Origin: Saccostrea echinata
Lineage: Eukaryota
Assembly: GCF_033153115.1 (NCBI RefSeq)
Contig: NW_026889803.1
Location: forward strand, 558,001 to 622,000
Direction of reading: 5' to 3'
Length of the DNA stretch: 64,000 nt
The notes beneath the pieces are model-generated. The model made no database searches. It was not told the DNA's origin and saw only the letters and a list, made by a program, of their open reading frames with translations. The translations under genes were made by a program, and so were the position numbers. Shown piece by piece: positions 29,570-31,218 of this stretch (its first letter is position 1; every line of letters starts with the position of its first letter).

Positions 29570-31218
29570 CTAGCTTCTCGGTTCCCCCTTCTGTCCCTTT
29601 TCTCCAATGTCACCCATGCTTCCTTTGACGTTTTGATCGCCTTTTACACCCTTCTCGCCCTTTTGGCCCTTAAGTGTCCCTGGTTCCCCCTTGCTACCCT
29701 TAGCTCCAGCAGCCCCTGCACTTCCTGTTGCTCCCTGATCTCCTTTGCTTCCCGCCTCGCCTTTAGCTCCTTTGGCTGCTGGCTCCCCTTTTTGACCTTT
29801 GCTACCTTGAGTACCTCCATCACCGGTTTCCCCAGCCTGTCCTTGATCCCCCTTTCCCCCTTTGCTTCCTGTTGTTCCTGTTTCCCCTTTATTTCCTTTA
29901 CTCCCTGTATCACCCTGGTCTCCTTTGAATCCTTTTTCCCCGTTAGCCCCAGCAGAGCCCTGAGCCCCGTTGTCACCTACAGAGCCTTGGTCTCCCTTTA
30001 TACCTTTTTGTCCTGCTTCGCCTTGTTCACCCTTTAGACCTGCATAAAATATACCTTAATGTAATTCATTGCAATGTGCCTAATTTGTATAGAAATTCAA
30101 ATATATATTAAGTTTTTTTTTGCTTTATAACACAACGATTGACATTTATGAGTTTTTATGATAACTGAACAAGAAAAAGAATTCAAAGTAAAAATAAATC
30201 TTGTTCTTTAAAGGTAGATAAGTATTTATATTGACCATGTAAAAATAAAAAAAAAGTTTCATCCTATAAACATAGTAAATTTGAAAACTATTTCCACATG
30301 CATTCACATTCACACAAATAAAAAAATCGTTTTTAAATGTCAGTACCTCTATAGGTGACAGGCCATATTAATTCTTTCTTGGAATTTACGATCACACAAT
30401 ATAATAACGGTAAGATGAGCATTACTCTTCAGAATAAGGGGAATTCAAACAATCAAGATAGAGAAAATTACTCATTATATATTTATTAAAAGACTTAATT
30501 GAATTATTTGATATTACATGTATATTTCTATTATGAATAAAATCAGGATAATTATTGTCGTTGGATATTCTTGTAATCCGAATTTTAGAATTGACTTGAA
30601 ATTAAATTACAATTTGTCGCACTAGAGAATCGGAGTAAGGAGTTGATCCTTACGTCGCGGGTTCGAATCCCATTGCTGGACATGGAGACATGTCCTTCGG
30701 ATAAGACTGTATGAACCAAAGTCCCGTGTCGCAATAGGTGCTGGCACGAAAAAGATCCCTCACTGCTCAAAGGCCGTAAGTGCTGAGTACAGTCCTCCAC
30801 CGGCAAGTAGTGGCGTCTCAATAAGAATGAAAAATTCTCGAAGGGACGTTAAACAAACAAATAAACAATAATCGATTTAAGCAGGTGAATAATTGGATAT
30901 CAACATTTTTTTAATCCTTTAAAACTTTAACCTTCAAATTATTTTTTTTTCAGCAAATCTTTAACAGCAAATAGTTCATTTCCATTTACCATTATTTTGA
31001 TAAAAAGACTAAATCATATCAAAGTTGAATAAATTACTTCTATCGTAGTTTTTAGTTCATCTTATATTACCTTTAAGTAAATTTAACGCCTCATCAGTAA
31101 GTCCATCGAATTTCGTTTTCAAGGAATTATATTTCCTAATATCCCTATTGCTGACAAAGTACCCCAAGATAGTTGGCAATCCACAGATAACCAGAGTTGC
31201 TATCAGCCAGGTCTTCAT
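29570..31218 (-). CDS. Secreted short-chain collagen-like protein, 205 aa; CDS = complement(join(29570..30039,31071..31218))
   Basis: Manual translation. Exon 31218-31071 reads MKTWLIATLVICGLPTILGYFVSNRDIRKYNSLKTKFDGLTDEALNLLK-G (signal-peptide-like N-terminus) and ends at a phase-1 GTAATA donor. A phase-1 ATGCAG acceptor at 30040 opens (G)LKGEQGEAGQKGIKGDQ...GEKGQKGEPRS-TAG, i.e. 49 Gly-X-Y triplets with no internal stop. AATAAA lies at 29492-29487. Confidence 0.9.
30617..30870 (+). mobile_element. tRNA-derived SINE in collagen intron 2 (antisense to the gene), 5'-clipped
   Basis: ggttcgaatccc B-box; same core and (AAAC)n tail as the other copies. Confidence 0.85.

What the first reader, a model, noticed from the sequence alone, without database searches (positions are those of the whole stretch)
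29570..31218. Hidden spliced gene for a proline-poor, lysine-rich secreted mini-collagen with no C-terminal domain
Seen: two coding exons with matching phase-1 splice sites give a 205-aa protein. It has a ~19-aa signal-like peptide, a ~30-aa non-collagenous segment and 49 Gly-X-Y triplets ending directly in RS-stop. There are only 3 Pro (all GEP), 23 Lys all in the Y position, 12 KGE/KGD motifs, no Cys after the signal peptide and three imperfections (AAK, GTLK, NVK). Known: animal collagens normally rely on hydroxyproline, and most secreted ones on a C-terminal trimerisation domain (COLFI, NC1, C1q, lectin). KGE/KGD salt bridges stabilise Hyp-free triple helices such as streptococcal Scl2. 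Inference: this is an animal collagen stabilised electrostatically, possibly a lineage-specific shell, ligament, mucus or adhesive matrix protein. The ORF track shows only its shadow frames.
Basis: partly seen in the sequence, partly recalled or inferred. Interest (0 to 1): 0.8.

Follow-up and report, generated by a model that had tools for sequence, protein, structure and literature searches.

The report
Short head-less collagen gene in a bivalve
This is a real, spliced gene for a small secreted collagen-like protein with very little proline, many lysine-acid pairs and no end domain; it belongs to a small bivalve gene family whose short N-terminal helical segment probably brings the three chains together.

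Summary
On the minus strand, ATG 31218 to donor 31071 and acceptor 30039 to TAG 29570 encode a signal peptide, a 30-aa segment and 49 Gly-X-Y triplets.

One 609-nt contig of a public run joins 31071 to 30039 exactly (GT..AG) and runs through the stop. It carries the bases of a 98-99% identical second copy on contig C30, so the window copy itself is not shown to be expressed. The two copies give dN/dS of about 0.1.

Four older tandem paralogues on C30 share the architecture. It comprises a signal peptide, a heptad segment ending in Lys, a phase-1 intron inside a Gly codon (in paralogue D, an Ala codon just before it), a collagen exon of about 150 aa, then a stop. So "no C-terminal domain" is a family trait, not a truncation.

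Leu33, Leu40 and Leu47 are invariant and spaced seven apart, directly before the first Gly.

No homologue of the N-terminus was found elsewhere. Function and tissue remain unknown. The scan noted other mini-collagens on another piece of this genome (s1-817919).

The parts
31389..31450 (-). Putative non-coding first exon. The 3' end at the GAG|GTATGT donor would be 31388/31387. The start is unknown and the end coordinates are approximate.
   Evidence: Read from the sequence only. No RNA evidence: the X1 contig starts at 31206.
31231..31387 (-). Putative 5' UTR intron of 157 nt, with a pyrimidine tract and CAG acceptor 12 nt before the ATG.
   Evidence: All six family loci have a strong acceptor 1-12 nt upstream of their ATG. 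Not confirmed by RNA.
31162..31218 (-). Signal peptide, codons 1-19, with Pro at -5 and Gly at -1.
   Evidence: Translation. P15 and G19 are invariant in 6 of 6 family sequences, and the paralogues have a classical h-region followed by V-P-E-I-A/T-G. No signal-peptide predictor was available, so cleavage is inferred.
31072..31161 (-). 30-aa heptad (coiled-coil-like) segment, codons 20-49. Core positions are Y30, L33, F37, L40, A44 and L47, and the segment ends in K49.
   Evidence: L33, L40, L47 and K49 are invariant. The same a/d register is best in all five distinct sequences. AF2 gives a helix over residues 3-48 at pLDDT 67. Weak PDB and Pfam matches are to coiled coils and leucine zippers.
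30040..31070 (-). Phase-1 intron of 1031 nt, GT..AG, splitting a Gly codon.
   Evidence: The X1 contig skips exactly these 1031 bases; the ends read CT..AC on the + strand. The C30 copy has a 1007-nt intron that is 93% identical.
30620..30870 (.). SINE-like interspersed repeat inside the intron. It is not part of the gene product.
   Evidence: At least 6013 first-look candidates in the genome, with the 40 scored at 83-100% identity. Very high contig depth in both runs. ARAGORN finds no tRNA.
29573..30039 (-). Collagen exon: 49 Gly-X-Y triplets with three imperfections, ending in ..GEP-R-S.
   Evidence: PF01391, E 1.1e-22. Covered without gaps by the X1 contig from 30037 to 29567.
29771..29779 (-). 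Interruption AAK (Gly replaced by Ala), at the one position where all five family members are interrupted.
   Evidence: Alignment A3: the paralogues have G-V-G, G-L-S-E-K-G or G-E-S-V-K-G at the same columns.
29669..29671 (-). Extra Lys after GTL. It is part of a 4-residue insertion private to this gene.
29624..29632 (-). NVK imperfection (Gly replaced by Asn), private to this gene and its C30 copy.
29570..29572 (-). TAG stop codon.
   Evidence: The X1 contig reads through it to 29567 with no unaligned overhang.
29487..29492 (-). AATAAA, a candidate polyadenylation signal 78 nt after the stop.
   Evidence: Read only. Not confirmed.

Best explanation
The locus is a functional gene of a small bivalve-restricted family: five distinct genes plus one near-identical copy. 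It has two coding exons and probably one non-coding leader exon. It encodes a roughly 186-aa mature secreted protein.

Shown:
- the gene structure;
- splicing, and read-through of the stop, in a transcript-like contig of the near-identical copy;
- purifying selection between the two copies;
- a conserved architecture across paralogues whose synonymous sites are saturated.

Inferred mechanism:
1. After signal-peptide cleavage at Gly19, three chains associate through the 3-4-heptad alpha-helical segment (Y30 to L47), which ends one residue before the first Gly.
2. This registers the chains and nucleates a triple helix that zips from the N- to the C-terminus, as described for membrane collagens.
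3. That would yield a rod of about 42-45 nm with a conserved flexible site after triplet 29.
4. With only about 3% imino acids, the helix would be held mainly by Lys(Y)-Gly-Glu/Asp(X) interchain salt bridges, 12 per chain. Hydroxylation or glycosylation of the 23 Lys that precede a Gly may also contribute.

The biological role is not determined. The candidates are an extracellular matrix or adhesive component, or a soluble humoral rod.
For: - **Structure and counts:**
- **Splicing:** one 609-nt contig of run X1 (depth 27.7) lies on 31206-31069 and 30037-29567, skipping 1031 nt with GT..AG. It has no gaps and no overhang. No intron-less copy exists in the genome: exon 1 matches 2 loci of 2 candidates, each with an intron of about 1 kb. 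The contig is therefore RNA-derived.
- **Which copy:** 10 of the 10 listed contig differences equal the C30 copy's bases.
- **Selection between copies:** 9 synonymous against 3 non-synonymous changes, dS 0.067, dN 0.006, ratio 0.095. The intron is 93% identical and the 5' flank 81%.
- **Paralogues A-D** at C30:20.047-20.080 Mb show the same phase-1 AAAG|GT donor after Lys, collagen exons of 151-158 aa, and a stop 0-9 aa after the last triplet. Synonymous differences to the window gene are saturated, pS about 0.73-0.83.
- **Heptad segment:** invariant L33, L40, L47 and K49. The heptad register is shared, with shuffles reaching the score in 28 to 569 of 5000.
- **Weak outside matches:** Pfam HALZ at E 0.15 over residues 28-48. 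Of 37 PDB matches at E<=10, the best is a designed coiled coil at E 7e-4. Most others are GCN4, tropomyosin, vimentin or NEMO coiled coils over profile positions 23-50.
- **Composition:** 3-8% imino acids in the family against 18-34% in most other collagen exons of this genome. KGE+KGD run at 14-28 per 100 triplets.
- **Position-specific charge:** all Glu and Asp are in X, and all Lys are in Y or before a Gly.
- **Literature (passages read):** coiled coils drive N-to-C folding of membrane collagens (PMC7848082). A coiled coil is a trimerisation module of a prophage collagen (PMC3368898). KGE/KGD salt bridges act as kinetic clamps (PMC11923368).
Against: - The only transcript evidence is one assembled contig from a run whose RNA status is a guess. 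It matches the C30-type sequence, not the window copy.
- Tissue, 5' end and poly(A) site are unseen.
- No tool here predicts signal-peptide cleavage or coiled-coil oligomer state. Leu at every d position is also typical of dimeric zippers.
- In the window gene the heptad score alone is not significant (544 of 5000 shuffles), and Gly39 sits in the helix.
- AF2 confidence is modest (pLDDT 67), and any 49-mer may come out helical.
- The triple helix has 3% imino acids and three imperfections, two of them derived in this gene, so its stability is unknown.
- No orthologue was found in other species, so conservation rests on paralogues of one genome.
Confidence: 0.6

Rival explanations
1. The protein is a type II membrane-anchored collagen. 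The N-terminal hydrophobic stretch is an uncleaved signal anchor, followed by a juxtamembrane coiled coil and a collagen ectodomain, like a miniature collagen XIII/XXIII/XXV.
For: In the window gene residues 4-22 form 19 mostly hydrophobic residues with no charge. The best named database hit, a Mercenaria 'collagen alpha-1(XXV) chain-like' protein of 247 aa, and hit P0003 both start with an anchor-like helix followed by a long helical region and collagen. Membrane collagens use exactly this order of coiled coil then collagen (PMC7848082).
Against: There is only one residue (Lys2) before the hydrophobic stretch, so there is no cytoplasmic domain. Pro at -5 and Gly at -1 are invariant. The four paralogues have a 12-residue h-region followed by a charged c-region (V-P-E-I-A/T-G), which is typical of cleaved signal peptides. 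The Mercenaria protein shares no N-terminal similarity: the exon-1 searches found only noise.
Confidence: 0.1
2. The product does not form a stable triple helix. It would be a secreted, flexible Gly/Lys-rich polyampholyte, for example a coacervate, mucus or glue component, in which the Gly-X-Y periodicity is an inherited relic.
For: Imino acids are only 3 of 98 X+Y positions. There are three imperfections, two of them newly acquired in this gene. There are no Cys knots.
Against: Gly is kept at every third residue in all five genes although their synonymous sites are saturated. Acidic residues are strictly in X and Lys in Y, which matters only in a triple helix. KGE/KGD motifs flank each imperfection, the arrangement reported around interruptions in folded collagens (PMC11923368). 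Hyp-free bacterial and phage collagens of similar composition are reported to fold (PMC3368898).
Confidence: 0.15
3. The gene is a decaying remnant or mis-modelled fragment of a longer gene, such as a C1q-, lectin- or COLFI-bearing collagen that lost its last exon.
For: Two private imperfections (Gly to Asn, and a 4-residue insertion) could be early decay. The window copy itself has no direct RNA support. Only 8 of the 18 downstream ORFs of 45 aa or more were scanned against Pfam.
Against: The contig reads through the TAG and ends with no overhang. Four paralogues stop at the same place. dN/dS between the copies is about 0.1. No domain was found downstream. Collagen tails on C1q genes are reported as extremely rare in bivalves and absent in the eastern oyster (PMC6835236, passages).
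Confidence: 0.05
4. The collagen exon was acquired from a bacterial, phage or giant-virus collagen-like gene and was later given a host signal and coiled-coil exon.
For: With the family profile, the best database matches are prokaryote- or phage-type collagen-like proteins. The top hit has E 6.5e-34, and all 7 of the 120 listed hits that I read are of this type. Composition is closer to those proteins than to this genome's other collagens.
Against: Similarity of low-complexity Gly-X-Lys-Gly-Asp/Glu repeats is compositional and shows no shared non-collagen domain. The gene has spliceosomal introns, a phase-1 split Gly codon and old host paralogues. No tree can be built from such repeats.
Confidence: 0.03

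Closest known systems
Membrane-associated collagens with interrupted triple helices (collagens XIII, XXIII, XXV, XVII)
   Same: An alpha-helical coiled coil lies directly N-terminal to the collagen sequence. There is no C-terminal trimerisation domain. Folding is reported to run from the N- to the C-terminus (PMC7848082, passages). The collagen is interrupted.
   Different: Those proteins are type II membrane proteins with a cytoplasmic domain, several COL domains, furin shedding and a normal proline content. This one has a cleavable-type signal peptide, one COL domain of 49 triplets and 3% imino acids. No sequence similarity was detected outside Gly-X-Y.
Bacterial and prophage collagen-like proteins (streptococcal Scl1/Scl2; E. 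coli prophage EPclA)
   Same: The triple helix is free of hydroxyproline and rich in charged residues. A trimerisation module lies N-terminal to the collagen; for EPclA the PCoil coiled coil is reported to be trimeric (PMC3368898, passages). The best profile hits are of this compositional type.
   Different: Those proteins are prokaryotic. They carry globular V, PfN or PfC domains or cell-wall anchors, and have no introns. This is a spliced animal gene with a eukaryotic signal peptide. The Scl2 details are recalled, not read here.
Defence collagens (C1q chains, collectins, ficolins)
   Same: They have a short collagen stalk encoded largely by one exon, one conserved interruption in mid-stalk, many Lys in the Y position, and tandem length-matched paralogues. 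The comparison with C1q and collectins is from recall.
   Different: No globular head (gC1q, C-type lectin or fibrinogen-like) was found here. There is no N-terminal Cys. The coiled coil is N-terminal, not a C-terminal neck. Bivalve C1q proteins mostly use coiled-coil tails without collagen (PMC6835236).
Domain-less short 'collagen-like' proteins and minicollagens of cnidarians
   Same: They are short secreted collagens. The Nematostella matrisome lists 'collagen-like' sequences with short triple-helical stretches and no additional domain (PMC12549020, passages).
   Different: Minicollagens have about 15 triplets flanked by polyproline and Cys-rich domains. The mature protein here has no Cys or polyproline and has 49 triplets. 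No sequence comparison was possible.
Crassostrea gigas 'Collagen-like protein 7' genes specific to the pediveliger stage (candidate larval adhesive)
   Same: They are oyster genes with only a collagen triple-helix domain, two of them adjacent, with about 25% Gly, proposed as the fibrous part of the larval glue (PMC6337334, passages).
   Different: About 11% proline is reported there, against about 2% of all residues here. They may resemble the C23 cluster, which has 12-24% imino acids, more than this gene.

Membership tests
Collagen triple-helix repeat proteins (Pfam PF01391) | Uninterrupted runs of Gly-X-Y that score above the family's gathering threshold. | tested here: met
   Exon 2 scores E 1.1e-22, 80 bits against a cut-off of 27.2. 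It has 49 triplets.
Collagen triple-helix repeat proteins (Pfam PF01391) | The protein actually forms a trimeric triple helix. | not testable with these tools
   This needs CD, SEC-MALS and protease resistance measured on the protein.
C1q/TNF-type collagens (C1q-like type I) | A C-terminal globular C1q domain (PF00386) follows the collagen tail. | tested here: not met
   The stop comes 2 residues after the last triplet. The contig reads through the stop. PF00386 was not found in 8 downstream ORFs scanned, of 18 that are 45 aa or longer. The four paralogues also end at a stop.
Fibrillar collagens | A C-propeptide (COLFI/NC1) and a long helix of about 330 triplets encoded by many small exons. 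| tested here: not met
   A single 470-nt collagen exon with 49 triplets and no C-terminal domain.
Collectins | A C-type lectin domain preceded by a coiled-coil neck C-terminal to the collagen, and an N-terminal Cys-rich segment. | tested here: not met
   There is no sequence after the collagen. The coiled-coil-like segment is N-terminal. The mature protein has no Cys.
Membrane collagens (MACIT) | A type II signal anchor with a cytoplasmic N-terminus. | tested here: inconclusive
   Only Met-Lys precedes the hydrophobic stretch. The family alignment shows signal-peptide features, with Pro at -5, Gly at -1 and a charged c-region in the paralogues. No predictor was available.
Membrane collagens (MACIT) | A coiled-coil oligomerisation motif lies N-terminal to the first collagen domain. 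| tested here: met
   A heptad pattern with invariant L33, L40 and L47 ends at K49, directly before Gly50. The oligomer state is not tested.
Membrane collagens (MACIT) | Several collagen domains separated by non-collagenous domains. | tested here: not met
   There is one collagen domain, with only 1-5-residue imperfections.
Cnidarian minicollagens | Terminal Cys-rich domains and polyproline stretches flank about 15 triplets. | tested here: not met
   There is no Cys after residue 12, 3 Pro in the collagen part and 49 triplets. The definition is taken from PMC12549020.
New family defined here (signal peptide, heptad segment, ~150-aa collagen, stop) | A phase-1 donor directly after the Lys that ends the heptad segment, splitting a Gly codon (an Ala codon preceding the first Gly in paralogue D). 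A collagen exon of about 150 aa. A shared interruption after about 29 triplets. A stop within 9 residues of the last triplet. | tested here: met
   This holds for the window gene, its C30 copy and paralogues A-D. In paralogue D the split codon is Ala and the first Gly follows it. The exon-1 profile finds exactly these 6 loci at E<=1 among 31 scored candidates.

The most novel reading that the evidence does not exclude
Bivalves may possess a family of animal collagens that work like bacterial Scl-type collagens. In this reading the chains are registered and nucleated from the N-terminus by a three- to four-heptad coiled coil. The helix is held by dense Lys-Gly-Glu/Asp salt bridges with almost no (hydroxy)proline, no cysteine knots and no globular domain. 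If so, this would be a minimal, self-sufficient triple-helix design in an animal. It might fold without prolyl hydroxylase, which would make it a natural template for recombinant collagen materials, and it may build a bivalve-specific secreted material.
Probability: 0.3. Interest if true: 0.65.

Novelty: new variant of a known kind. Interest (0 to 1): 0.45.

Why it matters
Animal collagens are usually explained by hydroxyproline plus a C-terminal trimerisation domain. This family has an N-terminal coiled coil, about 3% imino acids and about 25 KGE/KGD per 100 triplets, with nothing after the helix. It would be a compact natural test of two ideas now debated in the field. One is that salt-bridge 'clamps' can replace hydroxyproline (PMC11923368). 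The other is that a short coiled coil suffices to nucleate folding from the N- to the C-terminus (PMC7848082).

It is small enough (186 aa mature) to express and melt directly. It also adds an unannotated secreted protein family to the bivalve matrisome, in which short collagen-like genes have been proposed as larval glue components (PMC6337334).

The limits are plain. Short domain-less collagen-like proteins and coiled-coil-nucleated collagens are both known kinds. Nothing is known yet about tissue or function.

Tried and rejected
1. **Exon 1 alone against 1.84 billion representatives.** There were only 2 hits at E<=0.001. Both are long bacterial repeat proteins matched in 6-7 stretches and were judged noise.
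2. **ESM Atlas with exon 1.** The best score was 0.79, below the level at which shuffled sequences also score. No lead.
3. **Exon 2 against 5.8 billion proteins.** 547 hits among 2282 candidates. I read 10 of the 120 listed, and none has this architecture. The Mercenaria hit has a 125-aa anchor/helical N-terminus.
4. **Family profile A3.** I read 7 of the 120 listed, and all are prokaryote- or phage-type. Proteins outside 85-271 aa could not be seen, so longer or fused orthologue models are not excluded.
5. **Species check with the LINE reverse-transcriptase ORF.** The best identities were 48-57%. Named hits are Pinctada imbricata and Mytilus edulis. The genome is therefore bivalve, but its own proteome is not in that database. 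The absence of a 100% hit thus says nothing about whether the gene is annotated.
6. **Downstream domain search.** No C1q, lectin or COLFI domain in 8 of 18 ORFs.
7. **Furin idea,** prompted by note s1-817919. R-D-I-R at residues 25-28 fits a minimal R-x-x-R, but an equivalent site is seen in only 1 of the 4 paralogues. Dropped.
8. **Signal-anchor idea.** Kept as a rival at low weight.
9. **ARAGORN on the intron repeat.** No tRNA found.
10. **AF2 on exon 1.** A single helix at pLDDT 67, which is weak support only. No multimer prediction was available.
11. **Literature searches for a described bivalve family of this kind.** None found in the held library.

Supplementary files were not requested. 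The supplements of PMC6337334 (gene lists) and PMC11923368 may bear on the comparison with C. gigas collagen-like genes and on typical KGE/KGD densities. Persikov's KGE/KGD host-guest work, the Scl2 properties and the C1q/collectin gene features are recalled, not read. McAlinden 2003, Snellman 2000 and Latvanlehto 2003 were seen only as citations inside PMC7848082.
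Full report
**What is in the sequence**

On the minus strand an ATG at 31218 opens 49 codons that end one base before a GT donor (AAAG|GTAATA), so the exon ends at 31071. After a pyrimidine-rich CAG acceptor, a second exon starts at 30039 and runs to TAG at 29572-29570. 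Both junctions are phase 1 and the split codon is GGT, so the product has 49+1+155 = 205 residues.

All of them hold:
- 49 regular Gly-X-Y triplets.
- 3 Pro in the collagen part, all in GEP.
- 23 Lys: 20 in the Y position and 3 directly before a Gly in the imperfections.
- 7 KGE plus 5 KGD.
- All 11 Glu and all 9 Asp in the X position.
- The only Cys is in the signal peptide.
- Three imperfections: AAK, one extra Lys after GTL, and NVK.

Pfam Collagen matches exon 2 at E 1.1e-22. The mechanical ORF list shows only the shadow frames. The window has no N.

**Is it spliced and expressed?**

The look-up of sequencing runs gave two runs of one 2018 study. Their RNA status is a guess, and they come from two coded organisms. 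On window 27000-32900, run X1 has one 609-nt contig (depth 27.7) on the minus strand. It covers 31206-31069 and then 30037-29567. It skips 1031 bases whose ends read CT..AC on the plus strand, which is GT..AG on the gene strand. There are no gaps and no unaligned overhang.

That is exactly the predicted 31071/30039 junction, and the contig reads through the TAG.

The unique parts of the intron have no contig. The genome has no intron-less copy: exon 1 matches only 2 loci, each followed about 1 kb later by exon 2. The contig therefore derives from RNA.

All other laid contigs of X1, and all those of X2, fall on an interspersed repeat in the intron or on other repeats.

The caveat is that all 10 listed differences of the contig equal the bases of the second genomic copy at C30:26,082,301-26,083,922. 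Table 8 counts one more unlisted difference near the contig's end, consistent with an eleventh of the 12 exon differences between the copies. The transcript is thus of the C30 type, and the window copy has no RNA evidence of its own. The 5' UTR junction 31388/31230 and the AATAAA at 29492-29487 are not covered.

**Two copies, and selection**

Window positions 10.8-54.3 kb are collinear and inverted relative to C30:26.06-26.10 Mb, at 87-98% identity. This is either an uncollapsed haplotype or a large recent duplication.

Between the two gene copies the exons differ at 12 of 618 bases. The intron is 93% identical and the 300 bases upstream are 81% identical. Nei-Gojobori counting gives 9 synonymous and 3 non-synonymous differences, dS 0.067, dN 0.006 and ratio 0.095. 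Both copies keep the frame and the stop. This is what a gene under purifying selection looks like, although 12 differences is a small sample.

**A family with the same build**

Exon 2 finds 47 collagen-like places in the genome at E<=0.001, among 150 scored of 177 candidates. Four of them lie in tandem on the plus strand of C30 at 20.047, 20.062, 20.074 and 20.079 Mb. They are 45-55% identical to the window exon and of the same length.

Each of these four has an upstream exon that encodes a classical signal peptide followed by about 31 residues ending in Lys. After that Lys comes a phase-1 AAAG|GT donor. The acceptor completes a Gly codon; in paralogue D it completes an Ala codon directly followed by Gly. 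The collagen exon is 151-158 aa, and the stop comes 0-9 residues after the last triplet.

A profile of the six exon-1 peptides finds exactly these six loci in the genome at E<=1, of 31 scored candidates. Synonymous sites between the window gene and the four paralogues are saturated, with uncorrected pS of 0.73-0.83. The architecture has therefore been kept for a long time. The missing C-terminal domain is the family's design, not a truncation of this one gene.

All six loci also have a strong acceptor 1-12 nt before the ATG.

A weaker candidate relative lies at C23:3.507 Mb. It has a signal peptide, an aromatic heptad segment with two Cys, the same phase-1 donor after Lys and a 149-aa collagen frame. 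Its exon 1 aligns to the profile only at hhalign probability 34%.

In the alignment of the six exon-1 peptides the invariant residues are K2, L5, P15, G19, L33, L40, L47 and K49. Pro15 and Gly19 fit positions -5 and -1 of a signal-peptide cleavage site.

Leu33, Leu40 and Leu47 are spaced exactly seven apart. The positions between them (30, 37, 44) carry Tyr or Ser, then Phe, Val or Leu, then Ala, Val or Ile. The same a/d register is the best one in all five distinct sequences. Shuffles reach the observed contrast in 544 of 5000 for the window gene and its copy (569), and in 71, 28, 410 and 418 of 5000 for the paralogues. The evidence therefore lies in the conservation, not in any single sequence.

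Other support is weak:
- Pfam gives only a sub-threshold leucine-zipper hint over residues 28-48 (E 0.15).
- A PDB profile search gives 37 weak matches at E<=10. The best is a designed coiled coil at E 7e-4. Most of the rest are GCN4, tropomyosin, vimentin or NEMO coiled coils over profile positions 23-50. Four are photosystem membrane helices over the signal-peptide part.
- AF2 makes one helix over residues 3-48 at pLDDT 67.

I read this as a three- to four-heptad coiled coil ending one residue before the first Gly. The oligomer state could not be tested.

**How it most likely works**

According to passages I read in PMC7848082, membrane collagens oligomerise through coiled coils and then fold their triple helix from the N- to the C-terminus. 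In a prophage collagen a coiled coil placed before the collagen domain behaves as a trimerisation module (PMC3368898). The same logic fits here: the heptad segment registers three chains and the helix zips toward the C-terminus, so no C-terminal domain is needed.

For stability, the family has 3-8% imino acids in X+Y. Most other collagen exons of this genome that I sampled have 18-34%. The family has 14-28 KGE/KGD per 100 triplets, and 24.5 in this gene. PMC11923368 reports 3-6% as typical and up to 13% KGD in viral collagen-like proteins. It also reports that such salt bridges slow unfolding and cluster around interruptions.

Here each of the three imperfections has KGE or KGD on both sides, and the last 12 triplets hold five such motifs. 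The strict sorting of acids into X and Lys into Y only makes sense in a triple helix. Lys before Gly is also the usual site for hydroxylation and glycosylation; that point is from recall and is untested here.

One interruption, after triplet 29, is shared by all five genes in different forms. The other two are private to this gene and its copy. The shared one is probably a functional flexible site. The private ones could be tolerated noise or early decay.

**Rivals**

- A signal anchor instead of a cleaved signal peptide is possible for this gene alone. It does not fit the paralogues, whose c-regions are charged.
- A non-helical, flexible polyampholyte is not excluded, given the low imino content. 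It is hard to square with Gly being kept at every third residue across saturated divergence.
- A truncated C1q- or lectin-type gene is contradicted by the read-through contig, by the four paralogues and by the empty downstream ORFs (8 of 18 scanned). Collagen-tailed C1q genes are also reported as rare in bivalves (PMC6835236).
- A microbial origin of the collagen exon is suggested only by compositional similarity of the best database hits. I give it a few per cent.

**Comparison and novelty**

The protein is a member of the collagen-repeat superfamily (tested and met). It is not a member of the C1q, collectin, fibrillar, MACIT or minicollagen families, because defining features were tested and not met.

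It works most like MACIT collagens, in the order of coiled coil then collagen. It also works like Scl- or prophage-type collagens, in having a charged helix free of hydroxyproline and an N-terminal trimerisation module. Short domain-less collagen-like proteins are listed in the Nematostella matrisome (PMC12549020). C. gigas has pediveliger-specific 'collagen-like protein 7' genes proposed as glue fibres (PMC6337334). Those have about 11% Pro, and I could not compare their sequences.

I found no relative of the N-terminal exon outside this genome. I also found no protein of this architecture among the database hits I read, which were 17 of 240 listed rows. The database does not seem to hold this species' own proteome: the window's LINE ORF finds at most 57% identity, with named hits in Pinctada and Mytilus. 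'Unannotated' therefore cannot be judged. Proteins outside 85-271 aa were invisible to these searches.

Four literature searches found no description of such a bivalve family in the held library.

Earlier notes of this scan call the genome an oyster. They also list other mini-collagens on another piece. I used these only as leads.

**Verdict**

This is a new variant of a known kind and is moderately interesting (0.45). It is cheap to test biochemically, and its biological role is still open.

Noticed in passing
window 10841-54317 versus G000:C30:26,062,000-26,101,999 (L033, L038, L034, L039): More than 43 kb of the window is collinear and inverted relative to another contig at 87-98% identity, with several insertions and deletions. 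It is either an uncollapsed haplotype placed on contig C54 or a large recent segmental duplication. It carries the collagen gene in both copies.
   Followed up: partly
window about 30620-30870 (intron of the gene): A SINE-like repeat of about 250 bp with at least 6013 first-look candidates in the genome, the 40 scored at 83-100% identity. Assembled-contig depth is in the thousands in both runs, which come from two different coded organisms of one study. ARAGORN finds no tRNA in it. It is present in both gene copies.
   Followed up: partly
G000:C30:20,046,683-20,080,101 (L035, L036, L041, L044): Four tandem paralogous two-exon mini-collagen genes on the plus strand, 5-15 kb apart, about 6 Mb from the C30 copy of the window gene on the same contig. 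They are length-matched and share one interruption. Co-assembly into mixed trimers is conceivable but untested.
   Followed up: partly
G000:C23:3.48-3.51 Mb (L015, L018, L025): A second cluster of three single-exon collagen frames of 149-193 aa that end at a stop and have 12-24% imino acids. L018 has an upstream signal-peptide exon with an aromatic heptad segment, two Cys and the same phase-1 donor after Lys. This may be the tandem mini-collagens of note s1-817919.
   Followed up: partly
window 7742-9247 (-): A 501-aa open frame of a non-LTR retrotransposon reverse transcriptase. The best database relatives are 48-57% identical, and the named ones are from Pinctada imbricata and Mytilus edulis.
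   Followed up: partly
window about 31345-31378 (-), upstream of the gene: A short (GA)n / GAGCTT repeat in the putative 5' UTR intron. The C30 copy has a much longer (GA)n run at the same place.
   Followed up: no
window 36820-37404 (-) and 38444-38941 (+): A reverse-transcriptase-like fragment ORF (194 aa) and a 165-aa ORF that looks like the DNA-binding N-terminus of a transposase.
   Followed up: no
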